A stretch of 64,000 nt of DNA from Dendrobates tinctorius (lineage: Eukaryota). Numbering within the stretch: position 1 is the stretch's first letter; every line of letters starts with the position of its first letter. The DNA lies in the NCBI RefSeq assembly GCF_039654945.1, contig NW_027362117.1:1674001-1738000 (forward strand). The letters are read 5' to 3'. A program made the translations under genes and the position numbers. Positions 2,299 through 63,605 of the stretch are shown here, piece by piece. Below the pieces are notes generated by a model. That model saw only the letters and a list, made by a program, of their open reading frames with translations. It was not told where the DNA came from and did not search any database.

Positions 2299-2453
2299 CT
2301 GACATCAATGTCCGCCATCATGCGCTGCAGAGAAGCAGAGCCGACATCCCCCCCATCGACCTGGCGGTGTTGAAGGACCTGGAGATCCTGACTCAGGAAG
2401 TTGCACTAAAAGTCGATCAGATGATGAAAAGTTTGAGCGGCACAATCCAAAAT
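2299..2453 (+). CDS. BORCS6: BORCS6 internal exon (155 nt)
   Basis: tcttttag|CT GAC ATC ... CAA AAT|gtaaga. Confidence 0.85.
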
Positions 2454-4198
2454 GTAAGATACGTGAGCGCCATCGGTTGTAGCATGGCAGGGGGTCAGCG
2501 ATGCCACTATAAATGGCGCCTGCGTCTGATATGGAGATATACCGATATATACTGATGTACCCACCCCAGAGAGCAGCGCCCTCGTATCCCCAGAGCTGAC
2601 ATGTTTATTTGCAGATGACGGCGCTCAGCGTGGGATATATCCAGACGTACAGGGATTCTGTGGACAGTCTCGGGGAGTCAGTGGATATGAGCATCAAGGT
2701 AAGTGACAGAATGTCAAGTAGAGAAGGTTGGACCCCCCCTGTTTAATAAAATTCCAGTCCTGGAACATCTTTTGTTAAAATTCTACATTGTACTGTTCCT
2801 CCTAGAAATATATGAACAACTATTAGTTTGTCAAATGTTCTCTAAATTGTACTGATCCTGAGTTGCATCCTGTATTATACCCCAGAGCTGCACTCACTAT
2901 TCTGCTGGTGCAGTCACTGTGTACATACATTACTGATCCTGAGTTACCTCCTGTATTATACCTCAGAGCTGCACTCACTATTCTGCTGGTGCAGTCACTG
3001 TGTACATACATTACTGATCCAGAGTTACATCCTGTATTATACTCCAGAGCTGCACTCACTATTCTGCTGGTGCAGTCACTGTGTACATACATTACTGATC
3101 CTGAGTTACATCCTGTATTATATCCAAGAGCTGCACTCACTATTCTGCTGGTGCAGTCACTGTGTACTTACATTACTGGTCCTGAGTTACATCCTGTATT
3201 ATACTCCAGAGCTGCACTCACTATTCTGCTGGTGCAGTCACTGTGTACATACATTACATTACTGATCCTGAGTTACATCCTGTATTATACTCCAGAGCTG
3301 CACTCACTATTCTGCTGGTGCAGTCACTGTGTACTTACATTACATTACTGATCCTGAGTTACATCCTGTATTATACTCCAGAGCTGCACTCACTATTCTG
3401 CTGGTGCAGTCACTGTGTACATACATTACTGATCCTGAGTTACATCCTGTATTATACTCCACAGCTGCACTCACTATTCTGCTGGTGCAGTCACTGTGTA
3501 CATACATTACTGATCCAGAGTTACATCCTGTATTATACTCCAGAGCTGCACTCACTATTCTGCTGGTGCAGTCACTGTGTACATACATTACATTACTGAT
3601 CCTGAGTTACATCCTGTATTATATCCAAGAGCTGCACTCACTATTCTGCTGGTGCAGTCACTGTGTACATACATTACTGATCCTGAGTTACATCCTGTAT
3701 TATACTCCAGAGCTGCACTCACTATTCTGCTGGTGCAGTCACTGTGTACATACATTACTGATCCTGAGTTACATCCTGTATTATATCCAAGAGCTGCACT
3801 CACTATTCTGCTGGTGCAGTCACTGTGTACTTACATTACTGGTCCTGAGTTACATCCTGTATTATACTCCAGAGCTGCACTCACTATTCTGCTGGTGCAG
3901 TCACTGTGTACTTACATTACATTACTGATCCTGAGTTACATCCTGTATTATACTCCAGAGCTGCACTCACTATTCTGCTGGTGCAGTCACTGTGTAAATA
4001 CATTACTGATCCTGAGTTACCTCCTGTATTATACTCCAGAGCTGCACTCACTATTCTTCCTTCTCTCTGCAGGGGATGTACACCCTGATGGCGCGCTGTG
4101 AGGAGCTGGACCGGTCCATGCAGCCCATTCATGCTCTGGCCAAGCAGATCCGGGAGATTAAGCGCACGCTAGAAACGTTTGAGACGTTGTGTAAATAA
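2299..4198 (+). CDS. BORCS6: BLOC-1-related complex subunit 6 (lyspersin), 3' part; join(2299..2453,2615..2698,4073..4198); 5' exons lie outside the window
   Basis: Spliced translation ...ADIPPIDLAVLKDLEILTQEVALKVDQMMKSLSGTIQN/MTALSVGYIQTYRDSVDSLGESVDMSIK/GMYTLMARCEELDRSMQPIHALAKQIREIKRTLETFETLCK* matches the recalled BORCS6 C-terminal domain (TALSVGxIQTYRDxVDSLGExVDMSIKGMYTL). Canonical AG/GT sites, phases consistent. Confidence 0.88.
2615..2698 (+). CDS. BORCS6: BORCS6 penultimate exon (84 nt)
   Basis: tttgcag|ATG ACG GCG ... ATC AAG|gtaagt. Confidence 0.9.
2850..4057 (+). repeat. 81/86-bp minisatellite (actgatcctgagttacatcctgtattatactccagagctgcactcactattctgctggtgcagtcactgtgtacatacatt[acatt]), about 14.5 copies, last intron of BORCS6
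   Basis: Direct periodicity; same family as 61528-62818. Confidence 0.97.
4073..4198 (+). CDS. BORCS6: BORCS6 last coding exon (126 nt including TAA)
   Basis: ctctctgcag|GGG ATG TAC ... TGT AAA TAA. Confidence 0.9.
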   Translation, partial: GMYTLMARCEELDRSMQPIHALAKQIREIKRTLETFETLCK

Positions 4199-4225
4199 GT
4201 TATTGATACTGAGGATTCTATTTTT

Positions 4226-4231
4226 AATAAA
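4226..4231 (+). terminator. Probable BORCS6 polyadenylation signal AATAAA
   Basis: AATAAA 28 nt after the stop codon. Confidence 0.6.
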
Positions 4232-4401
4232 TGTATTATTGCACCAAAGATCAGAGCGAGTCCTGACCCGTCTGTGAGTGGAGGAGATGGGAGCGGAGCA
4301 GTGTGACCTTGGCCCCTGGGCTGATCATCCTGAGCTTCATGAATGGGATGGGGGAGCTGCGGATAGTGGGGTCACTCACTGCAGTCATGTGATTAATTCC
4401 A

Positions 4402-4640: not shown

Positions 4641-7600
4641 CTGCAAGAGGAAAAAAAAAAAGGAGTGATCAGATGGCGAAAAATGGCCGTAATGGACGAG
4701 TCATCAGACATGAAGCACGGGGGTCTCTGCCAGCCCACAGCACATGCAGAAGAGCGCAGCCACAGAACAGCACAGATCAGCGCGGCCACGAGCAGACACG
4801 GAAATACGCTTCACTCTGGAAATACCTGCTTGGGGCGGGGACGAGGTGGATCTACAGCTCTGTTCATCCTGAGCCTGCTGCTTCATGAATAGAATGCCAG
4901 AACTGCAGGAAAGACTGACACAGAATGGAGAGAGGGGGGGAATGAAGCTGCAGAAGGGCATGCTATTCAGAATCTCATGATACTGGGTGCGGGCCTGGAC
5001 TGCTGGGACCCCTCCCTATCAGCTCACCGGTGGTCAGGTAATGCAGTGACCCGGTATAGGCTGCTCTCCGGCTGTCAGATTATGATGGGAGTTGTAGTCT
5101 CGCTTCAGCTGGAGAGGCACAGTTTAGGATCTACCGGGTGGAAGATGCGGAGGAGTGATGGCTGTATCCAACCGAACTGTCACTATTTCCTGGCAGAAGC
5201 CTTCACCCCATTAATAATCTGCACCCGTTTTGTGTGCACAGCTCGCATGCAGACTGATGTGTTACACCCTGTGTAGTCTGAACCTGCAGTCGTGCACTGC
5301 TATCAGCCTCCTCTATGGTCTGGAGGCGAGGCACAGAAATAGATGAGCGGGTCTGTAGTGGAGCTGTGGACACTAAACAGGAGGAGGGTTGCTTTAATTT
5401 CAATTTGAGATGCTTCAAGCTTCCCCCCCCAAAAAAAAAACCCCAGAGTCCTCACCCTTCCATCACATCGCTCCCTAGAATAAAAAGCAACGAGGACAGC
5501 AACAAAGATTATAATAACTACACGCAAGTCAAAATCACTGCACCCACAGGTCCAGTCCTGCCCAGGCACAGACAGTAGATAAGCAACCTCCCGATATGTA
5601 ACCACTCAGCACGAACCCCAGGGTCTGCAATGCATCCTCATCCTGGCATCACCCGCACACAGCGAGGAGGACCCAGTATGGCCTGACCCGTAACTACATG
5701 AGGGGCCACAGCCCACGAGTACGGAGGGTGATGCTACGAGAATCATGTCCTCAGCTCTAACTATGGAAGCCGGATCTGTCAACAGCAGACACTCCACACA
5801 CGGTGTCCAGCTCTCAATGACTAACAATCTGTCAGCAGCAGCTTGCTGATGGTTTCCAAGCAGCAAATATTCGTCAAAAAAAAAAAAAAAAGTGATATGG
5901 CATTAGAGACTTGCTGGCCCGTGCATCCTTAATTACAGACCCCATAACACCGGCCCACACCCTGTCACTGATCAGGAAACTGTCGGCTTCTAATAACTAA
6001 AGAGACGGAACTACCCAATGGATAAAGCGAGAAAATATCAGAAATGTCACCAGCAGCCCACTGATGGTTTCTAGATAGCAAAGTATTGCTCTACACTGCA
6101 GCACTGATGACTTAAAGGGCCGGTACCATCTGTAGGTTTACAGTCTCCCCTTCCTGGTTGAGTAACACAGCCACTTCCTCTTCCCCAATGTCCACACGAG
6201 CTCATGTTATAGCGGATATTGGGCTTGGGCCCTTCCCGGCGCTGATCTAGCAAATTGTATGTAGAATGCAGGGGGGGGGGGGGTGTACAAAGGGTTAACA
6301 TCAGGTAAGAAAAAAAAATCCACACAACAAAATGGGACATCGAGGGCGATGAGGCCATGCGGGGGGGGGGGGGATCATGCAGCACAACAGTTATTCTGCG
6401 GTCACCACCATTCCAGAGGGCGGCAGAAAGTCAAAAGAAAAATGAAAGTGAGATTCAGAGCAAGAGGCGAAGGCGACGACGCACCGCGCAGGATCCGTCA
6501 CAGACCGGGGCCTGAACATGGAGAGGCGCGATTATTAGAATTTTCCCCTGTGATGTTGATCAAAAATCCCCAAAAAACATAATTCGGGTTTTGGCAGCAG
6601 AAACTTCATTGATCACAATAGTTCTGCGTTATCAGTGTCGCTTCCGATGCGGAGAGTGAGGCAGGACCTTGGGTGTAGTCATGTGACCGCTCAGGTCCTC
6701 TCCCCTGCGAGAGCCTGGAAGAGCTGAAGACGAGGATGTATGTGCTCTGTGTATACACCCTGTAGGTACGGGCTTGGTGTATATACCCGTGTGTGTGTAT
6801 GTATACATGTATCTGTGTGTATACACCCTGTGTGTACGGGCTTGGTGTATATACCTGTGTGTGTATACACCCTGTAGGTACGGGCTTGGTGTATATACCT
6901 GTGTGTGTGTGTGTGTGTGTATGTATACATGTATCTGTGTATACACCCTGTATGTATGGGCTTGGTGTATATACCCGTGTGTGTATACACCCTGTATGTA
7001 CGGGCTTGGTGTATATACCCGTGTGTGTGTATGTATACATGTATCTGTGTGTATACACCCTGTATGTACGGGCTTGGTGTATATACCTGTGTGTGTATAC
7101 ACGCTGTAGGTACGGGCTTGGTGTATATACCCGTGTGTGTGTGTATGTATACATGTATCTGTGTATACACCCTGTATGTACGGGCTTGGTGTATATACCC
7201 GTGGGTGTATACACCCTGTATGTACGGGCTTGGTGTATATACCCGTGTGTGTGTATGTATACATGTATCTGTGTGTATACACCCTGTAGGTACGGGCTTG
7301 GTGTATATACCCGTGTGTGTGTGTATACATGTATCTGTGTGTGTATACACCCTGTAGGTACGGGCTTGGTGTATATACCCGTGTGTGTATATATATACCC
7401 GTGTGTGTGTGTGTATACATGTATCTGTGTGTGTATACACCCTGTAGGTACGGGCTTGGTGTATATACCCGTGTGTGTGTGTGTATACATGTATCTGTGT
7501 GTATACACCCTGTAGGTATGGGCTTGGTGTATATACCCGTGTGTGTATACATGTATCTGTGTGTATACACCCTGTAGGTACGGGCTTGGTGTATATACCC

Positions 7601-10600
7601 GTGTGTGTGTGTATACATGTATCTGTGTGTGTATACACCCTGTAGGTACGGGCTTGGTGTATATACCCGTGTGTGTGTATACATGTATCTGTGTGTGTAT
7701 ACACCCTGTAGGTACGGGCTTGGTGTATATACCCGTGTGTGTGTGTATACATGTATCTGTGTGTGTATACACCCTGTAGGTACGGGCTTGGTGTATATAC
7801 CCGTGTGTGTATGTATACATGTATCTGTGTATACACCCTGTAGGTACGGGCTTGGTGTATATACCCGTGTGTGTATGTATACATGTATCTGTGTGTATAC
7901 ACCCTGTAGGTACGGGCTTGGTGTATATACCCGTGTGTGTGTGTATACATGTATCTGTGTGTGTATACACCCTGTAGGTACGGGCTTGGTGTATATACCC
8001 GTGTGTGTGTGTATACATGTATCTGTGTGTGTATACACCCTGTAGGTACGGGCTTGGTGTATATACCCGTGTGTGTGTGTATACACCCTGTAGGTACGGG
8101 CTTGGTGTATATACCCGTGTGTGTGTGTATACATGTATCTGTGTGTGTATACACCCTGTAGGTACGGGCTTGGTGTATATACCCGTGTGTGTATGTATAC
8201 ATGTATCTGTGTGTATACACCCTGTAGGTACGGGCTTGGTGTATATACCCGTGTGTGTGTATGTATACATGTATCTGTGTGTATACACCCTGTAGGTACG
8301 GGCTTGGTGTATATATACATGTATCTGTGTATACACCCTGTAGGTACGGGCTTGGTGTATATACCCGTGTGTGTATGTATACATGTATCTGTGTGTGTAT
8401 ACACCCTGTAGGTACGGGCTTGGTGTATATACCCGTGTGTGTGTGTGTATACATGTATCTGTGTGTGTATACACCCTGTAGGTACGGGCTTGGTGTATAT
8501 ACCCGTGTGTGTGTATGTATACATGTATATGTGTATACACCCTGTATGTACGGGCTTGGTGTATATACCTGTGTGTATACATTCTGTATGTACGGGCTTG
8601 GTGTATATACCCGTGTGTGTGTGTGTATGTATACATGTATCTGTGTGTATACACCCTGTAGGTACGGGCTTGGTGTATATACCCGTGTGTGTGTATACAT
8701 GTATCTGTGTGTGTATACACCCTGTAGGTACGGGCTTGGTGTATATACCCGTGTGTGTGTGTGTGTATATATACATGTATCTGTGTGTATACACCCTGTA
8801 GGTACGGGCTTGGTGTATATACCCGTGTGTGTGTGTGTGTGTGTATACATGTATCTGTGTGTATACACCCTGTAGGTACGGGCTTGGTGTATATACCCGT
8901 GTGTGTGTATGTATACATGTATCTGTGTGTATATACCCTGTAGGTACGGGCTTGGTGTATATACCCGTGTGTGTGTGTATACATGTATCTGTGTGTGTAT
9001 ACACCCTGTAGGTACGGGCTTGGTGTATATACCCGTGTGTGTGTGTGTGTGTATATATACATGTACATTGTAGAAGGATCAACTTTATTCTCATTTGCAC
9101 AAGGAAAGACTAGAAGCAATGGGATGAAACTGAATGGGAAGAGACACAGATTAGATATTAGAAAAAACTTTTTGACAGTTAGAGTGATCAATGAGTGGAA
9201 CAGGCTGCCACGAGAAGTGGTGAGTTCTCCTTCAATGGAAGTCTTCAAACAGAGGCTGGACAGACATCTGACTGGGATGATTTAGCGAATCCTGCTTTGA
9301 GCAGGGGGTTGGACCAGATGGCCCAGGAGGTCCCTTCCAACTCTATGATTCTATGATCGTATTTCTATGATCGTATCTGTGTGTATACACCCTGTAGGTA
9401 CGGGCTTGGTGTATACACCCTGTAGGTACGGGCTTGGTGTATATACCCGTGTGTGTGTGTATACATGTATCTGTGTGTGTATACACCCTGTATGTACGGG
9501 CTTGGTGTATATACCTGTGTGTGTATACATTCTGTATGTACGGGCTTGGTGTATATACCCGTGTGTGTGTGTATGTATACATGTATCTGTGTATACACCC
9601 TGTAGGTACGGGCTTGGTGTATATACCCGTGTGTGTGTGTATGTATACATGTATCTGTGTGTGTATACACCCTGTAGGTACGGGCTTGGTGTATATACCC
9701 GTGTGTGTATACATGTATCTGTGTGTGTATACACCCTGTAGGTACGGGCTTGGTGTATATACCCGTGTGTGTGTATGTATACATGTATCTGTGTATACAC
9801 CCTGTATGTACGGGCTTGGTGTATATACCTGTGTGTGTATACATCCTGTATGTACGGGCTTGGTGTATATACCCGTGTGTGTGTATGTATACATGTATCT
9901 GTGTGTATACACCCTGTAGGTACGGGCTTGGTGTATATACCTGTGTGTGTGTGTGTGTATACATGTATCTGTGTGTGTATACACCCTGTAGGTACGGGCT
10001 TGGTGTATATACCCGTGTGTGTGTATATATACACATGTATCTGTGTATACACCCTGTATGTACGGTCTTGGTGTATATACCTGTGTGTGTGTGTATACAT
10101 GTATCTGTGTGTGTAACACCCTGTAGGTACGGGCTTGGTGTATATAAGCGTGTGTGTATACATGTATCTGTGTGTGTATACACCCTGTAGGTACGAGGTT
10201 GGTGTATATACCCGTGTGTGTGTGTGTGTATACATGTATCTGTGTGTGTATACACCCTGTAGGTACGGGCTTGGTGTATATACCCGTTTGTGTGTGTATA
10301 CATGTATCTGTGTGTGTATACACCCTGTAGGTACGGGCTTGGTGTATATACATATACACATGTATCTGTGTGTGTATACACCCTGTAGGTACGGGCTTGG
10401 TGTATATACCCGTGTGTGTGTGTATACATGTATCTGTGTGTGTATACACCCTGTAGGTACGGGCTTGGTGTATATACCCGTGTGTGTGTGTATACATGTA
10501 TCTGTGTGTATACACCCTGTATGTACGGGCTTGGTGTATATACCTGTGTGTGTGTGTATACATGTATCTGTGTGTGTATACACCCTGTAGGTACGGGCTT

Positions 10601-13220
10601 GGTGTATATACCCGTGTGTGTGTGTATACATGTATCTGTGTGTGTATACACCCTGTAGGTACGGGCTTGGTGTATATACCCGTGTGTGTGTGTATACATG
10701 TATCTGTGTGTGTATACACCCTGTAGGTACGGGCTTGGTGTATATACCCGTGTGTGTGTGTATACATGTATCTGTGTGTGTATACACCCTGTATGTACGG
10801 GCTTGGTGTATATACCTGTGTGTGTGTGTATACATGTATCTGTGTGTATACACCCTGTAGGTACGGGCTTGGTGTATATACCTGTGTGTGTGTGTGTATA
10901 CATGTATCTGTGTGTATACACCCTGTAGGTACGGGCTTGGTGTATATACCCGTGTGTGTGTGTATACATGTATCTGTGTGTGTATACACCCTGTAGGTAC
11001 GGGCTTGGTGTATATACCCGTGTGTGTATACATGTATCTGTGTGTGTATACACCCTGTAGGTACGGGCTTGGTGTATATACTAGTGTGTGTGTATACATG
11101 TATCTGTGTGTGTATACACCCTGTATGTACGGGCTTGGTGTATATACCCGTGTGTGTGTGTATACATTATCTGTGTGTGTATACACCCTGTATGTACGGG
11201 CTTGGTGTATATACCCGTGTGTGTGTGTATACATGTATCTGTGTGTGTATACACCCTGTATGTACGGGCTTGGTGTATATACCCGTGTGTGTGTAGCGTC
11301 CACATTTCTACATCCCGGCTGCTCGTAGGTGTACACGTCGGTATTCGCCCTGCTCATTGGGTGATGGGATGGTTCGTTGCTGGCGGCAGCACGTCGCCGC
11401 TCTGCACGGCTGATCTCCTGATGCTGGCCGGGACAGACTGATCTATTGCTCGTTCAGTATAAAGAGGTCGGAAACCAGCGATGAGCGGCTCCAGTATTGT
11501 GAATCGCTCCTGACCTCCGCGCCTGTGACCACAGCCGAGCTGCTCCTGTGAGGAGGCGATGTGTCAGCACTCGGGGTCTCGCGTGGTCCACACCCGGCTC
11601 GCCCCTCGCTGGTGACCGTGGGCGTCTCAGGATACAGGAAGTATTCATACAATGTAACACGGGGGATACGAGGTTCTCTGCTCCGAGGCACCGGCCGCTG
11701 CGGCCACAGACACGTCATGCAGACCCCCGCGTGTCAGACATGCAGAACGGACGCCGGTGACAGCGAGATCAAAGCACGTACCCGCGCCTCGATGTACTCG
11801 ATCCGCCGCTCCAGAGCCGTCAGCTTCTCGTTCAATGTCGCCAGTCGTGATCGGCAGGACATGTCTGCAAATAAGAGAAGAGGTCAGAGCTCCGCACCGG
11901 ACCCGGGAGCACCCCAACACCCTGCACATAGGGGGCGCCCTGCACCCCAGACATAAGAGGAGAGGTCAGAGCTCCGCACCGGACACGGGAGCACCCCAAC
12001 ACCCTGCACATAGGGGACGCCCTGCACCCCAGACATAAGAGGTCAGAGCTCTGCGCCGGGCCCTGGGGCACCCCAACACCCTGCACGTAGGGGACGCCCT
12101 GCACCCCAGACATAAGAGGTCAGAGCTCCGCGCCGGACACGGGAGCACCTCAACACCCTGCACATAGGGGACGCCCTGCACCCCAGACATAAGAGGAGAG
12201 GTCAGAGCTCCGCGCCGGGCCCTGGGGCACCCCAACACCCTGCACGTAGGGGGCACCCTGCACCCCAGACATAAGAGGAGAGGTCAGAGCTCCGCACCGG
12301 ACCTGGGAGCACCTCAACACCCTGCACATAGGGGGCGCCCTGCACCCCAGACATAAGAGGAGAGGTCAGAGCTCCGCGCGCGGACCCTGGGGCACCCCAA
12401 CACCCTGCACGTAGGGGGCGCCCTGCACCCCAGACATAAGAGGAGAGGTTACAGCTCCGCACCGGACCCGGGAGCACCCCGACACCCTGCACATAGGGGG
12501 CGCCCTGTACCCCAGACATAAGAGGAGAGGTTACAGCTCCGCACCGGACCCGGGAGCACCCCGACACCCTGCACATAGGGGGCGCCCTGCACCCCAGACA
12601 TAAGAGGAGAGGTCAGAGCTCCGCGCCGGACCCTGGGGCACCCCAACACACTGCACGTAGGGGGCGCCCTGCACCCCAGACATAAGAGGAGAGGTTACAG
12701 CTCCGCACCGGACCCGGGAGCACCCCGACACCCTGCACATAGGGGGCGCCCTGCACCCCAGACATAAGAGGTGAGGTCAGAGCTCCGCACCGGACCTGGG
12801 AGCACCCCAACACACTGCACGTAGGGGGCGCCCTGCACCTCAGACATAAGAGGAGAGGTCAGAGCTCCGCACCGGACCGGGGAGCACCCCAACACCCTGC
12901 ATCCCAGACATAAGAGGAGAGGTCAGAGCTCCGCACCGGACCCCCGGGCATCACCTCACTAGATCGCAGGCGCCCACTCAGCGCATTACTCCACCCTGTA
13001 ACTAGAGGGCGCCACCATTCACAATATATTTACACAGAGACTTCCTGTCTATGCTGTCGCGACTACGAGCCCCCTTCCTCGCTCTCATGTCGCGACATTT
13101 ACCGAATGAGTTGAGGAAGTCGGCGATCTTCTTGATGCTGCTGGTGATCACCTCGATGTACTCGCGGTTGGCCCAGTCCTGGTGAATCTCCCTCTGCACC
13201 GGGTCCTCCTGGCTCGACAT
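4614..13220 (-). CDS. BRK1: BRICK1/HSPC300, SCAR/WAVE complex subunit, 75 aa; complement(join(4614..4640,11782..11864,13103..13220))
   Basis: [75 protein letters not shown] is nearly identical to recalled vertebrate BRK1. Exons of 118+83+27 nt with GT-AG sites. Confidence 0.97.
6745..11294. repeat. About 60-70-bp compound minisatellite (gtatacaccctgtaggtacgggcttggtgtatataccc(gt)n atacatgtatct(gt)n) in BRK1 intron 2, interrupted by a CR1 fragment
   Basis: Constant core with variable (GT)n lengths; each core has an 8-bp inverted repeat tatacacc/ggtgtata around a 16-nt spacer. Confidence 0.97.
9066..9372 (+). mobile_element. 5'-truncated CR1 LINE 3' end
   Basis: Encodes [46 protein letters not shown] (CR1 ORF2 C-terminus), followed by 3' UTR and an (ATTCTATG)-type tail. 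Confidence 0.92.
11782..11864 (-). CDS. BRK1: BRK1 exon 2 (83 nt)
   Basis: Reverse complement: ttgcag|AC ATG TCC TGC ... GCG CGG|gtacgt. Confidence 0.96.
11871..12945. repeat. 82-bp (some 77-bp) GC-rich minisatellite, about 13 copies, filling most of BRK1 intron 1
   Basis: Unit ataagaggagaggtcagagctccgcaccggacccgggagcaccccaacaccctgcacatagggggcgccctgcaccccagac. Confidence 0.95.
13103..13220 (-). CDS. BRK1: BRK1 exon 1, coding part (118 nt)
   Basis: Reverse complement: aagATGTCG ... TCA TTC G|gtaaat. Confidence 0.96.
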
Positions 13221-13545: not shown

Positions 13546-13549
13546 AAGA

Positions 13550-16500
13550 CAGGAGGAGGAGCTTAGATACACAGCTCAGCAGTCAGTATCACACAGGAGA
13601 GGATTAGATACACAGCTCAGCAGTCAGTATCACACAGGAGAGGATTAGATACACAGCTCAGCAGTCAGTATCACACAGGAGAGGATTAGATACACAGCTC
13701 AGCAGTCAGTATCACACAGGAGAGGATTAGATACACGGCTCAGCAGACAGTATCACACAGGAGAGGATTAGATACACGGCTCAGCAGACAGTATCACACA
13801 GGGGAGGATTAGATACACGGCTCAGCAGACAGTATCACACAGGATAGGATTAGATACACGGCTCAGCAGTCAGTATCACACAGGAGAGGATTAGATACAC
13901 GGCTCAGCAGTCAGTATCACACAGGAGAGGATTAGATACACGGCTCAGCAGTCAGTATCACACAGGAGAGGATTAGATACACGGCTCAGCAGACAGTATC
14001 ACACAGGATAGGATTAGATACACGGCTCAGCAGTCAGTATCACACAGGAGAGGATTAGATACACAGCTCAGCAGTCAGTATCACACAGGAGAGGATTAGA
14101 TACACAGCTCAGCAGTCAGTATCACACAGGAGAGGATTAGATACACAGCTCAGCAGTCAGTATCACACAGGAGAGGATTAGATACACGGCTCAGCAGACA
14201 GTATCACACAGGATAGGATTAGATACACGGCTCAGCAGTCAGTATCACACAGGAGAGGATTAGATACACGGCTCAGCAGTCAGTATCACACAGGATAGGA
14301 TTAGATACACGGCTCAGCAGTCAGTATCACACAGGATGGGATTAGATACACGGCTCAGCAGACAGTATCACACAGGAGAGGATTAGATACACGGCTCAGC
14401 AGTCAGTATCACACAGGAGAGGATTGGATACATGGCTCAGCAGTCAGTATCACACAGGAGAGGATTAGATACACGGCTCAGCAGTCAGTATCACACAGGA
14501 GAGGATTAGATACATGGCTCAGCAGTCAGTATCACACAGGATGGGATTAGATACACGGCTCAGCAGACAGTATCACACAGGAGAGGATTAGATACACGGC
14601 TCAGCAGTCAGTATCACACAGGAGAGGATTGGATACATGGCTCAGCAGTCAGTATCACACAGGAGAGGATTAGATACATGGCTCAGCAGTCAGTATCACA
14701 CAGGAGAGGATTAGATACACGGCTCAGCAGTCAGTATCACACAGGAGGGGATTAGATACACAGCTCAGCAGTCAGTATCACACAGGAGAGGATTAGATAC
14801 ACGGCTCAGCAGACAGTATCACACGGGAGGATTAGATACACGGCTCAGCAGACAGTATCACACAGGAGAGGATTAGATACACGGCTCAGCAGACAGTATC
14901 ACACAGGGGAGGATTAGATACACGGCTCAGCAGACAGTATCACACAGGATAGGATTAGATACACGGCTCAGCAGTCAGTATCACAGGAGAGGATTAGATA
15001 CACGGCTCAGCAGTCAGTATCACACAGGATAAGATTAGATACACGGCTCAGCAGTCAGTATCACACAGGAGAGGATTAGATACACGGCTCAGCAGACAGT
15101 ATCACACAGGAGAGGATTAGATACACGGCTCAGCAGTCAGTATCACACAGGAGAGGATTAGATACACGGCTCAGCAGTCAGTATCACAGGAGAGGATTAG
15201 ATACACGGCTCAGCAGACAGTATCACACAGGGGAGGATTAGATACACGGCTCAGCAGACAGTATCACACAGGGGAGGATTAGATACATGGCTCAGCAGTC
15301 AGTATCACACAGGATAAGATTAGATACACGGCTCAGCAGTCAGTATCACACAGGAGAGGATTAGATACACAGCTCAGCAGTCAGTATCACACAGGAGAGG
15401 ATTAGATAAACGGCTCAGCAGTCAGTATCGCACAGGAGAGGATTAGATACACGGCTCAGCAGTCAGTATCGCACAGGATAGGATGAGATACACTGCTCAG
15501 CAGTCAGTATCGCACAGGATAGGATTAGATACACGGCTCAGCAGACAGTATCACACAGGAGGATTAGATACACGGCTCAGCAGACAGTATCACACAGGAG
15601 AGGATTAGATACACGGCTCAGCAGTCAGTATCGAACAGGAGAGGATTAGATACACGGCTCAGCAGTCAGTATCGCACAGGAGAGGATTAGATACACGACT
15701 CAGCAGTCAGTATCGCACAGGAGAGGATGAGATACACGGCTCAGCAGTCAGTATCGCACAGGAGAGGATTAGATACACGGCTCAGCAGTCAGTATCGCAC
15801 AGGAGAGGATTAGATACACGGCTCAGCAGTCAGTATCGCACAGGATAGGATGAGATACACGGCTCAGCAGTCAGTATCGCACAGGATAGGATTAGATACA
15901 CGGCTCAGCAGACAGTATCACACAGGAGAGGATTAGATACACGGCTCAGCAGTCAGTATCGCACAGGAGAGGATTAGATACACAGCTCAGCAGTCAGTAT
16001 CACACAGGATATGATTAGATACACGGCTCAGCAGTCAGTATCGTACAGGAGAGGATTAGATGCACGGCTCAGCAGTCAGTATCGCACAGGAGGGGATTAG
16101 ATACACGGCTCAGCAGTCAGTATCGCACAGGAGAGGATTAGATACACGGCTCAGCAGTCAGTATCCCACACAGGATAGGATTAGATACACGGCACAGCAG
16201 TCAGTATCACACAGGAGAGGATTAGATACACGGCTCAGCAGTCAGTATCACACAGGAGAGGATTAGATGCACGGCTCAGCAGTCAGTATCGCACAGGAGA
16301 GGATTAGATACACGGCTCAGCAGTCAGTATCGCACAGGAGAGGATTAGATACACGGCTCAGCAGTCAGTATCGCACAGGAGAGGATTAGATACATGGCTC
16401 AGCAGTCAGTATCACACAGGAGAGGATTAGATACACGGCTCAGCAGTCAGAATCACACAGGATAGGATTAGATACACGGCTCAGCAGTCAGTATCACACA

Positions 16501-19500: not shown

Positions 19501-20286
19501 ATTAGATACACGGCTCAGCAGTCAGTATCACACGGGATAGGATTAGATACACGGCTCAGCAGTCAGTATCACACAGGATAGGATTAGATACACGGCTCAG
19601 CAGTCAGTATCACACGGGATAGGATTAGACACACAGCTCAGCAGTCAGTATCACACAGGATAGGATTAGATACACGGCTCAGCAGTCAGTATCACACGGG
19701 ATAGGATTAGATACACGGCTCAGCAGTCAGTATCACACGGGAGAGGATTAGATACACGGCTCAGCAGTCAGTATCACACGGGAGAGGATTAGATACACGG
19801 CTAAGCAGTCAGTATCACACGGGGTAGGATTAGACACACAGCTCAGCAGTCAGTATCACACGGGATAGGATTAGATACACGGCTCAGCAGTCAGTATCAC
19901 ACGGGAGAGGATTAGATACACGGCTCAGCAGTCAGTATCACACGGGAGAGGATTAGATACACGGCTCAGCAGTCAGTATCACACGGGATAGGATTAGACA
20001 CACGGCTCAGCAGTCAGTATCACACAGGATAGGATTAGATACACGGCTCAGCAGTCAGTATCACACAGGATAGGATTAGACACACAGCTCAGCAGTCAGT
20101 ATCACACAGAGGATTAGATACACGGCTCAGCAGTCAGTATCACACGGGAGAGGATTAGATACACGGCTCAGCAGTCAGTATCACACGGGAGAGGATTAGA
20201 TACACGGCTCAGCAGTCAGTATCACACGGGATAGGATTAGATACACAGCTCAGCAGTTAGCATCACTTATGAAAGGATTAGATACG
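13550..20286. repeat. 41-bp satellite (ggattagatacacggctcagcagtcagtatcacacaggaga), about 164 copies, with an internal 1476-bp higher-order duplication
   Basis: 41-bp period measured directly (e.g. 13601 to 13642). Confidence 0.98.
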
Positions 20287-33761: not shown

Positions 33762-35358
33762 GGGCCGCAGCCTACAGGCGGGGACCGGGGGGGGGGGGGG
33801 GGCGCCGCAGCCTACAGGGGACGGGGGGCGCCCGCAGCCTACAGGGGACGGGGGGCGCCCGCAGCCTACAGGGGACGGGGGGCGCCCGCAGCCTACAGGG
33901 GACGGGGGGCGCCCGCAGCCTACAGGGGACGGGGGGCGCCCGCAGCCTACAGGGGACGGGGGGCGCCCGCAGCCTACAGGGGACGGGGGGCGCCCGCAGC
34001 CTACAGGGGACGGGGGGCGCCCGCAGCCTACAGGGGACGGGGGGCGCCCGCAGCCTACAGGGGACGGGGGGCGCCCGCAGCCTACAGGGGACGGGGGGCG
34101 CCCGCAGCCTACAGGGGACGGGGGGCGCCCGCAGCCTACAGGGGACGGGGGGCGCCCGCAGCCTACAGGGGACGGGGGGCGCCCGCAGCCTACAGGGGAC
34201 GGGGGGCGCCCGCAGCCTACAGGGGACGGGGGGCGCCCGCAGCCTACAGGGGACGGGGGGCGCCCGCAGCCTACAGGGGACGGGGGGCGCCCGCAGCCTA
34301 CAGGGGACGGGGGGCGCCCGCAGCCTACAGGGGACGGGGGGCGCCGCAGCCTACAGGGGACGGGGGGCGCCGCAGCCTACAGGGGACGGGGGGCGCCGCA
34401 GCCTACAGGGGACGGGGGGCGCCGCAGCCTACAGGGGACGGGGGGCGCCGCAGCCTACAGGGGACGGGGGGCGCCGCAGCCTACAGGGGACGGGGGGCGC
34501 CGCAGCCTACAGGGGACGGGGGGCGCCGCAGCCTACAGGGGACGGGGGGCGCCGCAGCCTACAGGGGACGGGGGGCGCCGCAGCCTACAGGGGACGGGGG
34601 GCGCCGCAGCCTACAGGGGACGGGGGGCGCCGCAGCCTACAGGGGACGGGGGGCGCCGCAGCCTACAGGGGACGGGGGGCGCCGCAGCCTACAGGGGACG
34701 GGGGGGCCCGCAGCCTACAGGGGACGGGGGGGCCCGCAGCCTACAGGGGACGGGGGGGCCCGCAGCCTACAGGGGACGGGGGGGCCCGCAGCCTACAGGG
34801 GACGGGGGGGCCCGCAGCCTACAGGGGACGGGGGGGCCCGCAGCCTACAGGGGACGGGGGGGCCCGCAGCCTACAGGGGACGGGGGGGCCCGCAGCCTAC
34901 AGGGGACGGGGGGCGCCGCAGCCTACAGGGGACGGGAGGGCCCGCAGCCTACAGGGGACGGGAGGGCCCGCAGCCTACAGGGGACGGGGGGGCCCGCAGC
35001 CTACAGGGGACGGGGGGGCCCGCAGCCTACAGGGGACGGGGGGGCCCGCAGCCTACAGGGGACGGGGGGCCCGCAGCCTACAGGGGACGGGGGGCCCACA
35101 GCCTACAGGGGACGGGAGGGCCCGCAGCCTACAGGGGACGGGGGGCCCGCAGCCTACAGGGGACGGGGGGCCCGCAGCCTACAGGGGACGGGGGGCGCCG
35201 CAGCCTACAGGGGACGGGAGGGCCCGCAGCCTACAGGGGACGGGAGGGCCCGCAGCCTACAGGGGACGGGGGGGCCCGCAGCCTACAGGGGACGGGAGGG
35301 CCCGCAGCCTACAGGGGACGGGAGGGCCCGCAGCCTACAGGGGGGGGGCAGCCTACAG
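33762..35358. repeat. 26/27-bp very GC-rich minisatellite (gcagcctacaggggacggggggcgccc), about 59 copies, ALAS1 intron 1
   Basis: Direct periodicity; variant units are arranged in blocks. Confidence 0.97.
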
Positions 35359-42495: not shown

Positions 42496-44127
<1,632 letters not shown>

Positions 44128-57808: not shown

Positions 57809-60800
57809 GTGAGTGCGCACTGGAGGGGCCACAGCAGGAGCGAACGGGCTGAGACTTGTAGTTCCCCTGTGATGTCTTCTTCTGTCAGAGACGCAATATC
57901 TGTGCGACCCCCGGGGGTCCGAGCAAGTGTCCCCCGCACCCTCTTGGGCTGTGTGCACACACTGCGGAATCACCTGCGGGTAAAGTGACCTGCGGTTTCA
58001 CACTTCTACCATGTTAAGGCTGTGTGCACACGTTGCGGATTCTGCTGCGTTTCCGCAGCGGTTTTGGCCCTGCGGAAACGCAGCAGTTCCGCTGACCATG
58101 TACAGTACAATGAAAGCCTATGGGGTTTCAAAACCGCTGTGCTCACAGTGCAGTTTTTTCTGCGCGGTTTTGCTGCGGTTTACAAACCACAGCGTGTCAG
58201 TTGTTTGTGCGGTTTCCGCAGCGGTTTCCCACCTTTACCATAGTAGAGGTGTGAAACCGCAGGAAAACCGCAGACCAAACCGCAGGTCACTTTACCTGCA
58301 TTTCCGCCCGGAAAAATCTGCAGCGGAATCCGCAACGTGTGCACATAGCCTTAGGCTGCGGTTTTTGTTGCGGAGCTGCAGCAGTTCTGCAGACAGGGTA
58401 CAGTACCATGTAACCCTATGGGATTCACAATCCGCTGTGCCCACGCTGCTGTTTTTTCCGCGGTTTATAAACCGCAGCATGTCAGTTGTTTCTGCGGATT
58501 CCGCTGCGGTTTCACACCTCTACTATGTTAAGGCTATGTGCACACGCTGCGGATTTTTAACTGTGGAAAAGCTGCGGTTTGCCACCTATTCCATTGTCCA
58601 GGCGTCAAACTGCAGGCCAATCCGCAGTGTGTGCACACAGCCTTATTGCTCCACAGCCCGGAGCGTCCGCTGCACGTATAGCGGATCACAAGGCGCAGAA
58701 CAAGGAGCGAGCCACAGACCTCACCTCATAGAGTGCCACCGAGTACCTGACAGAGCGCCTCAAAGAGTGCCACCGAGCGCCTCAGAGCGAGCCACAGACC
58801 TCACCTCATAGAGTGCCACCGAGTACCTGACAGAGCGCCTCAGAGTGCCACCAAGCGCCTGACGGAGCGCCTCATAGACTGCCACAGAGCGCCTCAGAGC
58901 GAGCCACAGACCTCACCTCATAGAGTGCCACCGAGTACCTGACAGAGCGCCTCAAAGAGTGCCACCGAGCGCCTCAGAGCGAGCCACAGACCTCACCTCA
59001 TAGAGTGCCACCGAGTACCTGACAGAGCGCCTCAAAGAGTGCCACCGAGCGCCTCAGAGCGAGCCACAGACCTCACCTCATAGAGTGCCACCAAGCGCCT
59101 GACGGAGCGCCTCATAGACTTCCACCGAGCGCCTCAGAGCGAGCCACAGACCTCACCTCATAGGGAACCACCGAGCGCCTGACAGCGCCTCAAAGAGTGC
59201 CACCGAGCGCCTGACAGAGCGCCTCAAAGAGTGCCACAGAGCGCCTCATAGACTGCCACCAAGCGCCTCAGAGCGAGCCACAGACCTCACCTCATAGGGA
59301 ACCACAGAGCGCCTCATAGAGCACAACCGAGCGCCTGACAGAGCGCCTCATAGACTGCCACCGAGCGCCTCAGAGCGTGCCACAGACCTCACCTCATAGG
59401 GAACCACCGAGCGCCTGACAGAGCGCCTCATAGACTGCCACTGAGTTCCTGACAGAGAGCTTCATAGAGCGCCACCGAGTGCACGACCGAGCACCTCATA
59501 GAGAACCACAGAGCGCCTCAGAGCGTGCCACAGACCTCACAACAGACCTTACCTCATAGGGAACCACCGAGAACCTGATAGCATGCCACTGACCACATCA
59601 CCAAGTGCCTCAGAGTGCTCCACAGACTGCACGAGCAAGCACCTTAGAGAGCGCCTCAGAGCACACGAGCGACTGCCACATACCGCACGACTTAGCGCCT
59701 CAGACCATGCCGCATAGCGTGCCACAGACCTCACAAGTGAGCCCCTCAGATCGTGCCTCAGACCGCGTCACCGAGCGCCTCATAGCGAACCACCGACAGC
59801 GCCTCAATAATACCCGTCCTGTGCCGTGTCACTGCCGATAAGTGTCCCACGTCCGGCCGCTGTCACCGGCTCTGACAAACCTCTGACCTCTCTCCTCAGG
59901 AGGATCCATCCCTGGAGCGGAGCTTCAAAGGTCACCGAGACACCGTCACCAGCGCCGACTTCAACCCCAACATGAAGCAGATCGGTGAGTGACCGACACA
60001 GGCAAGAGAGCACCGCACCGCAGCAAGAGCGCAGAAGAGTGAATGCCAGCAGTGTCTGGTGACCGCCCGTCACCTCCATCATCAGTGTCTGGTGACCGCC
60101 CGTCACCTCCATCATCAGTGTCTGGTGACCGCCCGTCACCTCCATCATCATTGTCTGGTGACCGCCCGTCACCTCCATCATCAGTGTCTGGTGACCGCCC
60201 GTCACCTCCATCATCAGTGTCTGGTGACCGCCCGTCACCTCCATCATCAGTGTCTGGTGACCGCCCGTCACCTCCATCATCAGTGTCTGGGGACCGCCCG
60301 TCACCTCCATCATCAGTATCTGGTGACCGCCCGTCACCTCCATCATCAGTATCTGGCGACCGCCCGTCACCTCCATCATCAGTGTCTGGCGACCGCCTGT
60401 CACTAGAGATGGGCAGACCCCTTGATGTTCGGGTTTAAACATGACAGCGCGGCAAACACTGGATCTGATTGGCGGTAAAATCATTACTGCCAGTCAGAGA
60501 GCCTCAATTTTCACACTGTCAAATGGAACAACGTGGGAATCGGAAATAAAAAGCTGGGGGCTGGAATTCACAGGCTGGTAAGGGGCCATGGATATTGCCC
60601 CCCAGCCAAAAAATAACAGCCCGCAGCCTCCCAGAAAAGGCACATTAGATGCACCAATTCTGGCGCTTTGTCCGACTCTTCCCACTTTTCCTGTATCGGT
60701 GGCAAGTGAGGTTCATATTTGTGGGGTTGATGTCACCTTTGTATTGTCCGGTGACATCAAGCCCATGGCTTAGGAATGGAGAAGCGTCTATAAGACACCC

Positions 60801-63605
60801 ATCCATTACTAATCCTATAGTTGTATGGTAAATAAAGACACAGCCAGAATAAAGTCCTTTATTAGAAATAAGACAAAACACGTTTACTTATTATTTAAAA
60901 ATAACAAACAGTTATACTCACCTAACGCCTAATTCCACCGAAGCCCTCATCTCCTGTAATAAAAAAAAATAAAAAAACGTCACTCACCTGTCTGCCCCTC
61001 TGTCCCACGCCGTAATCCATGTCTGAGGGATAAAGTTTTCAACCTGGATGGTGCCAAGATGCGACCGTCCAGCTGAGAACCACTGGTGAATGAGATGTCT
61101 CGACTGCAGCATCAGTGACCAGTGGTGACGTCATCAAGGGTACCACCGGTCAGTGAGGCTGCGTTCCCAGCAGGGCTGAACTGAGGTGACCTCGGTGAGA
61201 GCAGCGCTGCACCATGAGACTTTTTTCTCACTGTGCTATCAGTTATCTCACCGATGTTTCTGCAGTTTAGGGGCCCGGCTAGGAACGCAGCCTCACTGAC
61301 CGGTGGTACCCTCAATAATGAGGATCTGCAGATCAGTGACGGAGGTGGAAGGTCTGGGACTTTAATTCTGCTAATGGAGTTGTGTGTTTGGTCAGGATTA
61401 ATGGTATCCACAATGCTGAGAAATCCCGTAAGAGACTGACCCATCATGTAATATCAAGAGGCGACTTGTTCCAAATTTATTACATAGTCGTTTCCTCCCC
61501 ACTTTACAAATATCATCACTATCTCCATTGGTGCAGTCACTGTGTAGACACTGATACATTACTGATCCTGAGTTACATCCTGTATTATACCCCAGAGCTG
61601 CACTCACTATTCTGCTGGTGCAGTCACTGTGTACATACATTATATTCCTGATCCTAAGTTACATCCTGTATTATACCCCAGAGCTGCACTCACTATTCTG
61701 CTGGTGCAGTCACTGTGTACATACATTATATTCCTGATCCTAAGTTACATCCTGTATTATACTCCAGAGCTGCACTCACTATTCTGCTGGTGCAGTCACT
61801 ATGCACATACATTACATTACTGATCCTGAGTTACCTCCTGTATTATACTCCAGAGCTGCACTCACTATTCTGCTGGTGCAGTCACTATGCACATACATTA
61901 CATTACTGATCCTGAGTTACCTCCTGTATTATACTCCAGAGCTGCACTCACTATTCTGCTGGTGCAGTCACTGTGTACATAAATTACATTACTGATCCTG
62001 AGTTACATCCTGTATTATACTCCAGAGCTGCACTCACTATTCTGCTGGTGCAGTCACTGTGTACATAAATTACATTACTGATCCTGAGTTACATCCTGTA
62101 TTATACTCCAGAGCTGCACTCACTATTCTGCTGGTGCAGTCACTGTGAACATACATTACTGATCCTGAGTTACCTCCTGTATTATACTCCAGAGCTGCGC
62201 TCACTATTCTGCTGGTGCAGTCACTGTGTACATACATTACATTACTGATCCTGAGTTACATCCTGTATTATACTCCAGAGCTGCACTCACTATTCTGCTG
62301 GTGCAGTCACTGTGTACATACATTACATTACTGATCCTGAGTTACATCCTGTATTATACCCCAGAGCTGCACTCACTATTCTGCTGGTGCAGTCACTGTG
62401 TACATACATTACATTACTGATCCTGAGTTATATCCTGTATTATACTCCAGAGCTGCACTCACTATTCTCCTGGTGCAGTCACTGTGTACATACATTACAT
62501 TACTGATCCTGAGTTACATCCTGTATTATACCCCAGAGCTGCACTCACTATTCTGCTGGTGCAGTCACTGTGTACATACATTACATTACTGATCCTGAGT
62601 TACATCCTGTATTATACTCCAGAGCTGCACTCACTATTCTGCTGGTGCAGTCACTGTGTACATACATTACATTACTGATCCTGAGTTACATCCTGTATTA
62701 TACTCCAGAGCTGCACTCACTATTCTGCTGGTGCAGTCACTGTGTACATACATTACATTACTGATCCTGAGTTACCTCCAGTATTATACCCCAGAGCTGC
62801 ACTCACTATTCTGCTGGTAATGGTGATGATTTCCTTGCAGCCAGTGGATCTATGGACTCATGTGTGATGGTTTGGAACATGAAGCCTCAGATGAGGGCTT
62901 ACCGCTTTGTGGGCCATAAGGATGCAGTGATGTCTGTGGAGTTCTCTCCCTCCGGTCATCTCCTCGCTTCGGCCTCCAGGGATAAGACCGTCCGCCTGTG
63001 GGTCCCCAGTGTGTGAGTATCGGGGTCTTGTTCTCGTACCTCCGCTTGCTGTCAGTGGTGGGATACACATTTCTGAACACTTCTCCTGATTGTGGAGCTC
63101 TTTCTCCCCCTGGTGGTGGATTTAGGTACTGCCCATGACCTGCATTCATCCTCACATGACCCGGGCTGTGATTTCTCTCTGCTCCTGCACACACGGTTTC
63201 TGGTCCCCGTTCTTCTCGTGGGGCAGATGGGGCCGTGTTCCGGAAATAAATCTTATAGTCTTACTATAGAGAATCTGGCAGGAGATGCTGGACGTGGCTA
63301 CATACAAGCCGGAGAGGAGACCGGCAGAGCCGGGTGGAGCGGTCAGTCCTGTGGGGGCCGCACAGAGATGCCAATCCCCCGTGTTCAGACCACCAGACGT
63401 TTTCACTTGTGACTTTATTTTCTAGGAAGGGAGAATCGACCGTGTTTAAAGCCCACACGGGCACGGTGCGGAGCGTCAGCTTCTCCAGCGATGGGCAGTC
63501 CCTGGTCACCGCGTCCGACGACAAGACGGTGAAAGTGTGGACGGTGCACAGGCAGAAGTTCCTGTTCTCCCTGAATCAGCACATAAACTGGGTGCGCTGC
63601 GCCAG
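57797..63605 (+). CDS. POC1A: POC1 centriolar protein A (WD40), 5' part; join(57797..57808,59900..59984,62841..63012,63426..63605); continues beyond the window
   Basis: [121 protein letters not shown] is A-type rather than B-type; head-to-head with ALAS1. Confidence 0.95.
57947..58643. mobile_element. Nest of related Harbinger-type MITEs in POC1A intron 1
   Basis: Left termini ggct(g/a)tgtgcacac at 57947, 58018 and 58532; right termini gtgtgcaca(t/c)agcc at 58350 and 58642; TAA/TTA flanks. Confidence 0.8.
58700..59790. repeat. Complex tandem repeat built from gagcgcctca / gagtgccacc / gagccacagacctcacctcata modules, decaying rightwards; POC1A intron 1
   Basis: Recurring modules with an approximately 82-bp higher period at the left end. 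Confidence 0.88.
59900..59984 (+). CDS. POC1A: POC1A exon 2 (85 nt)
   Basis: ctcctcag|GAG GAT CCA ... ATC G|gtgagt. Confidence 0.95.
60050..60403. repeat. 33-bp minisatellite, about 10.5 copies (cagtgtctggtgaccgcccgtcacctccatcat)
   Basis: Direct periodicity; each unit has a 6-bp hairpin ggtgac-cgccc-gtcacc. Confidence 0.96.
61528..62818 (+). repeat. 86/81-bp minisatellite, about 15 copies, POC1A intron 2; same family as 2850-4057
   Basis: Consensus unit identical to the BORCS6 intronic array. Confidence 0.97.
62841..63012 (+). CDS. POC1A: POC1A exon 3 (172 nt)
   Basis: ccttgcag|CC AGT GGA ... AGT GT|gtgagt. Confidence 0.95.
63426..63605 (+). CDS. POC1A: POC1A exon 4 (180 nt)
   Basis: ttttctag|G AAG GGA ... 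GCC AG|gtaagg. Confidence 0.95.

What the first reader, a model, noticed from the sequence alone, without database searches (positions are those of the whole stretch)
2850..4072. Same 81/86-bp minisatellite docks onto a 3' splice site in two genes, in the same orientation and phase (BORCS6 copy)
Seen: every unit contains CTCAC-TATTCTGCTGGTGCAG, a branch-point-like motif followed by CAG, i.e. an acceptor mimic. The array ends at ...CTCACTATTCT and runs straight into TCCTTCTCTCTGCAG|exon, so the probable branch A (4050, -23) is repeat-derived. The copy in POC1A intron 2, 58 kb away, breaks at the same place in the unit. Inference: a dispersed mobile tandem repeat either targets or is retained at acceptors because its end substitutes for the branch point. 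This is the best candidate here for an undescribed system.
Basis: partly seen in the sequence, partly recalled or inferred. Interest (0 to 1): 0.7.

Follow-up and report, generated by a model that had tools for sequence, protein, structure and literature searches.

The report
Abundant frog satellite abutting two acceptors
Two introns in this poison-frog window each hold a 1.2-1.3 kb array of one very abundant, ancient frog repeat that stops 15 and 22 bases before the next exon; in BORCS6 the repeat must now supply the intron's branch point, but nothing yet shows that the repeat seeks out or is kept at splice sites.

Summary
Array A1 (2850-4057, 14.7 units of 81/86 bp) and array A2 (61529-62818, 15.0 units) are the same repeat on the gene strand. 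They end 15 nt and 22 nt before the acceptors of the last BORCS6 intron and of POC1A intron 2. The break points are near but not equal: they lie 6 nt apart in the unit, and the start phases differ.

The unit is not a local oddity. About 10^4 assembled contigs per run carry it in three organisms, and the same unit turns up in predicted proteins of Ranitomeya imitator and Eleutherodactylus coqui. The window is 41.5% tandem arrays.

In BORCS6 the 15 native bases contain no A except that of the AG. The branch point must therefore be repeat-derived, most likely CTCAC with A4050 at -23. The same junction is present in two other organisms. In POC1A native adenosines at -21 and -15 remain available.

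It needs a genome-wide map, which these tools could not give.

Verdict: this is a new member of a known kind, a dispersed frog satellite or minisatellite with passive branch-point takeover.

The parts
2299..2453 (+). BORCS6 coding exon (third from last seen in the window)
   Evidence: Pfam PF10157 positions 2-35. AG acceptor at 2297-2298 and GT donor at 2454-2455.
2615..2698 (+). BORCS6 penultimate coding exon
   Evidence: Pfam PF10157 positions 37-64, E 1e-5. Donor AAG|GTAAGT at 2699.
2699..4072 (+). Last BORCS6 intron: 1374 nt, of which 166 nt are not array
   Evidence: GT at 2699-2700 and AG at 4071-4072. The Pfam profile runs on without a gap across the junction.
2850..4057 (+). Array A1: 14.7 units of 81/86 bp, with a repeated three-unit block (period 248)
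   Evidence: TRF, unit table. The flanks are not unit-like.
4046..4053 (+). Repeat-derived branch-point candidates: A4050 in CTCAC at -23, plus A4046 (-27) and A4053 (-20)
   Evidence: A4050 is the only full yUnAy match in the AG-free zone upstream of the acceptor. This is inferred, not mapped.
4058..4072 (+). Native 15-nt pyrimidine tract plus AG, with no A except that of the AG
   Evidence: T>C changes at 4064 and 4068 in organisms B/C keep it pyrimidine.
4073..4198 (+). Last BORCS6 coding exon segment, up to the stop codon
   Evidence: Pfam PF10157 positions 66-101, E 3.8e-14.
59900..59984 (+). WD40-gene (POC1A-like) exon 2
   Evidence: WD40 match. Splice sites read.
59985..62840 (+). POC1A-like intron 2: 2856 nt, of which 1566 nt are not A2
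61529..62818 (+). Array A2: 15.0 units, mostly 86 bp, with TGGT at both ends. Weak in-phase likeness of the flank from about 61516.
   Evidence: TRF, units, anchored flank test P about 0.04, flanking 16-nt imperfect inverted repeat I6.
62819..62840 (+). Native 22-nt spacer with possible branch adenosines at -21, -15 and -12
62841..63012 (+). POC1A-like exon 3
   Evidence: WD40 E 5e-15. Sequence.

Best explanation
A1 and A2 are two independent intronic arrays of one ancient, extremely abundant 81/86-bp repeat family of hyloid frogs. They lie in a recombination-prone, minisatellite-saturated region.

Each array was seeded by one or a few units. How the seed arrived is unresolved: it may have been a solo transposon-like copy or a reintegrated satellite circle. 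Each array then grew in place by unequal exchange or slippage.

Their position next to acceptors is most likely chance plus tolerance. On the gene strand the unit carries a good branch-point motif (CTCAC), followed by an AG-free, moderately pyrimidine-rich stretch and only weak acceptor look-alikes. A sense copy that ends there can therefore sit inside the normally forbidden branch-point-to-AG zone without destroying splicing.

In BORCS6 the last, truncated unit has taken over the branch point, and the native 15-nt pyrimidine tract and AG still define the acceptor. In POC1A the takeover is optional.

What is shown: the arrays, the junctions, the abundance of the family, the shared junction in relatives, and the lack of a native A. 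What is inferred: the branch-point use, the in-place growth, and the chance placement.
For: Family abundance. On the 108 repeat bases of the laid stretch, 9,397, 9,973 and 34,371 contigs from organisms A, B and C align. Summed depth is 10^5-10^6 times that of the adjoining unique exon.

Age and spread. Predicted proteins made of the same unit occur in Eleutherodactylus coqui (73% identity) and Ranitomeya imitator (96% over one unit).

In-place growth. A2 has adjacent identical variant units in an AABBCC pattern. A1 has a repeated three-unit block (period 248). Units are equally alike within and between arrays: 96.5, 96.3 and 96.2%.

Independent insertions. The boundaries are sharp, and the flanks are unlike the unit and unlike each other.

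Branch point. Positions 4058-4072 have no A but that of the AG. CTCAC with A4050 at -23 is the only full yUnAy match in the AG-free zone.

Junction in relatives. Contigs from organisms B and C cover 4032-4260 (2 differences) and 4027-4252 (8 differences plus 1 gap), so both carry the same array/exon junction.

Context. The window is 41.5% tandem arrays. Frog extended subtelomeres are known to be rich in transposon-fragment minisatellites that expand by unequal crossing over (PMC10794172).
Against: Position alone gives a nominal chance of about 0.002 for both arrays ending within 22 nt of an acceptor. Both lie in the zone where insertions are normally selected against (PMC3088655). Both break within one 17-nt segment of the unit. 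No RNA evidence was obtained: the RNA run that was laid had no contig on the BORCS6 exon. Branch-point use and the silence of the 28 look-alike sites are therefore untested.
Confidence: 0.62

Rival explanations
1. There is a real acceptor bias. Arrays of this family are preferentially integrated at intron 3' ends, or preferentially survive there. One route is that the CTCAC-TATTCT-GCTGGT segment of the unit resembles native branch-point and pyrimidine-tract sequence and guides microhomology-mediated joining. Another is that spacer deletions are tolerated only when a sense copy replaces the branch point.
For: Both arrays are sense and lie 15 and 22 nt from acceptors, with a nominal position probability of 0.002. 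Both ends fall within the same 17-nt segment. The A2 left flank keeps a weak in-phase look-alike of that segment (TCACTAT...TGGT, P about 0.04). TTCT at the A1 junction can be read either as unit or as tract. A possible third case exists at MED21 (unchecked). Satellites that spread through microhomology-mediated repair are documented in Drosophila (PMC7403614).
Against: There are only two loci and the selection was post hoc. The end phases differ by 6 nt and the start phases differ. Contigs running past 4057 mostly continue as a normal unit, so there is no family-wide terminus. The family is so abundant that some acceptor-adjacent copies are expected. First-stage readers notice arrays next to exons and not those elsewhere. 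Other, unrelated minisatellites of this genome also abut acceptors. That points to a general property of the region, or of the reading, and not to a family-specific system.
Confidence: 0.2
2. The arrays were born locally from each intron's own acceptor region, as are other acceptor-copy minisatellites noted in this genome. They only look alike.
For: Earlier scan notes describe locally born acceptor-copy arrays in GLYR1, GPT2, BOP1 and FBXO3. Both real acceptors end in TGCAG, as the unit's look-alike does.
Against: The units of the two arrays are 96% identical. The same unit fills about 10^4 contigs per run in three organisms and occurs in other frog genera. The native spacers do not match the unit.
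Confidence: 0.02
3. The arrays ride on a transposon: a MITE-borne tandem repeat like Xstir/Xmix or miDNA4, or Helitron-type tandem copies. The shared end phase would then be the fixed end of the parent element.
For: Old, conserved, very abundant units fit a transposon origin. Some long contigs align to only about one unit and then run into heterogeneous sequence, which suggests solo copies (loose ends). A 16-nt imperfect inverted repeat brackets A2 (I6).
Against: No terminal sequence is shared by the two arrays on either side. No target-site duplication was seen. The unit does not fold better than shuffled sequence (z -0.86) and has no internal inverted repeat. The ends are not TC...CTRR. The right ends differ by 6 nt and abut native intron directly.
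Confidence: 0.12
4. Assembly artefact: a collapsed or misplaced satellite inserted by the assembler.
For: Long tandem arrays are error-prone in assemblies.
Against: Independent short-read contigs of three runs and organisms cross the array/exon junction at 4057/4058 with 26-31 nt of repeat. Both introns keep canonical splice sites and continuous protein profiles.
Confidence: 0.03

Closest known systems
Euchromatic dispersed satellite arrays (Drosophila Rsp-like/1.688; Tribolium Cast satellites)
   Same: Short arrays of an abundant satellite lie scattered in gene-rich DNA. They have sharp junctions and grow locally by unequal exchange. A2 shows the pattern predicted for reintegration of a circle: truncated first and last units that together make one monomer, here with a 4-nt overlap (PMC7403614).
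   Different: No extrachromosomal-circle data exist for this frog. A1 does not show the integer-unit pattern. Here the arrays sit inside the branch-point-to-acceptor zone of introns.
Transposon-fragment minisatellites of frog extended subtelomeres (Bredeson et al. 2024)
   Same: The window is 41.5% tandem arrays from many families. Such arrays derive from dispersed elements and expand in recombinogenic regions (PMC10794172).
   Different: A parent element for this unit was not identified. The chromosomal position of the window is unknown.
MITE-borne tandem repeats in Xenopus (Xstir on Xmix; miDNA4)
   Same: A roughly 80-bp unit forms a dispersed family of arrays in a frog genome (PMC9659126).
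   Different: No terminal inverted repeats or carrier sequence flank either array. No sequence comparison with Xstir was possible, because no Xstir sequence was at hand.
Repeat-supplied splicing signals
   Same: An inserted repeat lying within about 20 nt of an acceptor replaces the native branch point, while the old acceptor is kept.
   Different: Here the same family does this, or nearly does this, at two genes 58 kb apart. Use of the branch point is inferred and not mapped.
Introner elements (transposons that carry splice signals and create introns)
   Same: A mobile repeat with splice-signal-like sequence on one strand. This comparison rests on my own knowledge and was not tested here.
   Different: These arrays sit inside pre-existing introns that have their own donor, 150 nt of native 5' sequence, and native pyrimidine tract and AG. 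They did not create the introns.

Membership tests
Dispersed satellite / minisatellite family | Head-to-tail tandem units at more than one locus | tested here: met
   Two arrays of 14.7 and 15.0 units. Units are 96% alike between arrays.
Dispersed satellite / minisatellite family | High copy number genome-wide and presence in related species | tested here: met
   9,397 to 34,371 contigs per run in three organisms, with depth 10^5-10^6 times that of the unique flank. Unit-built proteins occur in Ranitomeya and Eleutherodactylus.
Dispersed satellite / minisatellite family | Local expansion or homogenisation within arrays | tested here: met
   Adjacent identical variants in A2 and a repeated three-unit block in A1.
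Circle-mediated satellite reintegration | First and last truncated units sum to one monomer, with microhomology at the junctions | tested here: inconclusive
   A2: 15.0 units with TGGT at both ends. A1: 14.7 units with no such pattern. No circle data.
MITE-borne tandem repeat (Xstir/Xmix type) | Array flanked by conserved terminal inverted repeats and a target-site duplication | tested here: not met
   The flanks are unlike each other and unlike the unit. Only one imperfect 16-nt inverted pair, at A2. The unit fold has z -0.86.
Helitron-type tandem copies | 5' TC and 3' CTRR ends, a 3' hairpin, and insertion between A and T | tested here: not met
   The array ends lie at ...TATTCT and ...GCTGGT, not at CTRR. 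Only a 6-bp stem is present.
Locally born acceptor-copy minisatellite | Unit derived from, and confined to, the host intron's own 3' end | tested here: not met
   The same unit is at two genes and in about 10^4 contigs per run.
The metagenome and viral scans were empty.
   The ends differ by 6 nt and the starts differ. Position 4057 is not a family-wide terminus.
Repeat-supplied branch point | No usable native branch adenosine between the insert and the acceptor | tested here: met
   BORCS6: positions 4058-4072 have no A but that of the AG. POC1A: not met, because native A at -21, -15 and -12 remain.
Repeat-supplied branch point | Branch point mapped to the repeat by lariat reads or mutation | not tested
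   The single read-laying run found no RNA contig on the exon.

The most novel reading that the evidence does not exclude
This ancient hyloid-frog satellite has a true bias for the 3' ends of introns. Its CTCAC-pyrimidine segment pairs with native branch-point and pyrimidine-tract sequence during break repair, or only sense copies that replace the branch point survive. Arrays would then accumulate at acceptors and repeatedly take over branch points. Such a repeat family would shape intron 3' ends and intron growth in large amphibian genomes.
Probability: 0.18. Interest if true: 0.65.

Novelty: new member of a known kind. Interest (0 to 1): 0.36.

Why it matters
As it stands, this is a clean natural example of a satellite array inside the normally forbidden branch-point-to-acceptor zone. 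The branch point of a conserved gene has been handed over to the repeat. Upstream lie 14 look-alike branch-point/AG modules that the spliceosome must ignore, which makes a ready substrate for testing how the correct acceptor is chosen. If the acceptor bias proved real genome-wide, it would tie satellite spread to splice-signal mimicry. It would also bear on how introns in giant amphibian genomes grow without breaking splicing.

Tried and rejected
- Array ORFs as bait. I used open reading frames through the array to find other genomic copies. The 64-aa query gave one ENA hit. The 199-aa query gave three hits, including E. coqui and R. imitator.
- DNA around those hits.
- Exact-pattern scans. 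Two scans of metagenome contigs and one of viral contigs gave 0 matches.
- Rfam on 2600-4300: no match.
- Further copies in the window: none beyond chance.
- Degenerate units or shared transposon sequence in the flanks: not significant.
- MITE-like foldback or inverted repeats in the unit: none.
- Helitron-type ends: not present.
- Literature. No paper holds the unit's core words. No dendrobatid satellite paper was found. The D. tinctorius genome paper does not treat satellites.
- RNA evidence. The RNA run that was laid had no contig on the BORCS6 exon. Only 3950-4260 was laid, to keep the long repeat out of the query, so the 5' junction and the exon-exon joint were not examined.
- Spliced protein models. 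They were searched exon by exon, by reference. The joined model was left out.

Full report
WHAT IS THERE

Tandem Repeats Finder reports array A1 at 2850-4057 (period 81, 14.7 copies, 94% matches; also period 248). It reports array A2 at 61529-62818 (period 86, 15.0 copies, 96% matches). Both are on the + strand. Splitting the arrays into units shows that the 86-bp form is the 81-bp form plus an extra ACATT.

The 27-nt core that holds CTCAC...TGGTGCAG occurs 14 times exactly in A1. In A2 it occurs 12 times exactly, twice with one mismatch, and once truncated at the array's end. Shuffled sequence gives none.

Units are as alike between the arrays (96.2%) as within them (96.5% and 96.3%). Each array also has private variants in neighbouring units: an AABBCC pattern in A2 and a repeated three-unit block in A1. 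These show growth in place. No further copy lies in the window.

THE GENES

Three successive + strand exons (2299-2453, 2615-2698, 4073-4198) match the BORCS6 C-terminal profile PF10157 at positions 2-35, 37-64 and 66-101. The last intron is therefore 2699-4072, 1374 nt, with GTAAGT...GCAG. Only 166 nt of it are not array. The neighbouring intron is about 160 nt.

Exons at 59900-59984 and 62841-63012 are WD40 exons. An ALAS gene lies on the minus strand at about 23.5-29.7 kb. That fits POC1A by synteny and by my recollection of its N-terminus; the name was not otherwise tested. That intron is 59985-62840, 2856 nt, of which 1566 nt are not A2.

Spliced models were searched exon by exon, by reference. 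The joined model was left out.

THE JUNCTIONS

A1 ends at ...CTCACTATTCT (4057) and is followed by 15 native nt and the exon. A2 ends at ...CTATTCTGCTGGT (62818) and is followed by 22 native nt and the exon.

The two breaks lie 6 nt apart in the unit, so they are close but not 'the same place'. The arrays also start at different phases, TACTGATCC versus TGGTGCAG.

Flanks on all four sides show no significant likeness to the unit. The one exception is a weak in-phase resemblance left of A2 (TCACTAT...TGGT, P about 0.04). The two left flanks are not significantly alike.

A2 is an integer number of units with TGGT at both ends. It is bracketed by an imperfect 16-nt inverted repeat. An array whose truncated first and last units sum to one monomer is what Sproul et al. 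predict for reintegration of a satellite circle (PMC7403614). A1 does not show this pattern.

WHAT THE FAMILY IS

I laid Logan contigs of four runs on 3950-4260, which covers about one unit plus the exon. The repeat part drew 9,397 contigs from organism A, 9,973 from B, 34,371 from C, and 1,671 from an RNA library. Summed depth there was 10^5-10^6 times that of the adjoining unique exon. The tool warns that this is not a copy number, so I use it only as an order-of-magnitude sign of a very abundant family.

Contigs that run past 4057 mostly continue as the normal unit, so 4057 is not a family-wide end.

Translating the array and searching the protein word index gave predicted 'proteins' built of the same unit. 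One is from Eleutherodactylus coqui (73% identity). One is from Ranitomeya imitator (96% over one unit, at the tail of a gene model). Two are from ENA contigs, and their array starts are at yet other phases.

The family is therefore old and widespread in hyloid frogs.

I found no paper that holds the unit's core words. Rfam has no match. The unit does not fold better than shuffled sequence (z -0.86) and has no inverted repeats. Nothing marks it as a MITE or a Helitron.

The window itself is 41.5% tandem arrays from at least 14 families. That fits the satellite-rich, recombinogenic extended subtelomeres described for frogs, where transposon fragments expand into minisatellites by unequal crossing over (PMC10794172). 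According to earlier notes of this scan, the genome is that of the dyeing poison frog.

BRANCH POINT

In BORCS6 the native spacer 4058-4072 has no adenosine apart from the AG. Upstream, the AG-free zone reaches back to 4040. The only full yUnAy match in that zone is CTCAC with A4050 at -23; A4046 and A4053 are weaker.

Everything for 1.2 kb upstream is array. The branch point of this intron is therefore repeat-derived with high probability. This is an inference from sequence and has not been mapped.

The same junction is present in organism B (contig covering 4032-4260, 2 differences) and organism C (4027-4252, 8 differences and 1 gap). With 26 and 31 repeat bases on the array side, only the C contig meets the tool's 31-letter bridging rule. 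The two changes in the native tract are T>C, so it stays pyrimidine.

In POC1A, native adenosines at -21, -15 and -12 remain. The repeat's CTCAC lies at -36, so takeover is optional there.

Each full unit carries CTCAC followed 17 nt later by CAG. Its pyrimidine tract is interrupted by G's: 11 of 16 pyrimidines, against 15 of 16 at the real BORCS6 site and 10 of 16 at the real POC1A site.

Whether these 28 look-alikes are ever used could not be tested.

IS THE ACCEPTOR POSITION MORE THAN CHANCE?

With uniform placement in the residual introns, both ends falling within 22 nt of the acceptor has probability about 0.002. Adding strand and phase gives about 8e-5.

This figure is post hoc. The family is enormous. 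Strand and phase are not independent of position, because only a sense copy that offers a branch point could survive so close to an acceptor. In mammals this is a zone depleted of transposable elements (PMC3088655). First-stage readers also notice arrays next to exons and not the others.

On the other side, an unchecked note of this scan reports an 86-bp satellite 12 nt before MED21 exon 2 in the same genome (s1-369600). That may be the same family.

I therefore give a real acceptor bias about 0.2. It needs a genome-wide map, which the tools here could not provide.

VERDICT

The branch-point takeover in BORCS6 is well supported. The 'docking system' is untested.

The closest known things are dispersed euchromatic satellites, frog subtelomeric minisatellites, and repeats that supply splicing signals. 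I class this as a new member of a known kind.

Noticed in passing
window 1-64000: 41.5% of the window is tandem arrays from at least 14 unrelated families. Examples: a 40-bp unit at 4-1799, a 68-bp unit at 6813-11294, a 41-bp unit x164 at 13549-20285, a 26-bp unit at 33797-35343, and a 22-bp unit x128 at 54426-57187. It looks like a frog extended-subtelomere type region.
   Followed up: partly
window 2886-2918 and every unit (unit columns 5-37): Within the 28 units, the segment AGCTGCAC...GTGCAGTCACT has only 2 variant events, against about 20 in the other 50 columns (rough binomial P about 0.002). The same segment is the best-conserved part in the E. coqui copies. A conserved core inside a satellite monomer may mark a binding or recombination site.
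   Followed up: partly
window 61137-61176 and 61273-61312: A 40-nt inverted repeat, 95% complementary, with 96 nt between the arms, lies in POC1A intron 2 about 200 nt upstream of A2. It is a foldback or MITE-like element of unknown family.
   Followed up: no
window 60050-60403: A 33-bp minisatellite (10.7 copies, 97% matches) begins 65 nt downstream of the POC1A exon 2 donor. The same intron thus carries two unrelated arrays.
   Followed up: no
window 63907-64000: A 28-bp array whose unit contains CTCTTGCAG, an acceptor-like word. It is cut by the end of the window, in the next POC1A intron.
   Followed up: no
window 23581-29715 (-): ALAS-type gene on the minus strand (Preseq_ALAS and aminotransferase exon matches). 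A 37-bp array at 24188-25139 lies inside it.
   Followed up: partly
window 42714-43801 (-), 50312-51111 (+), 46812-47621 (-): Tc1/Sleeping-Beauty-type transposase remnants (DDE_3, HTH_SB, HTH_Tnp_Tc3_2), plus a 270-aa reverse-transcriptase-looking ORF with no Pfam hit.
   Followed up: partly
P0004 (Ranitomeya imitator gene model): An annotated 188-aa protein ends in about 1.3 units of this repeat read in the sense frame. Either a unit is exonized there or the gene model runs into an array.
   Followed up: no
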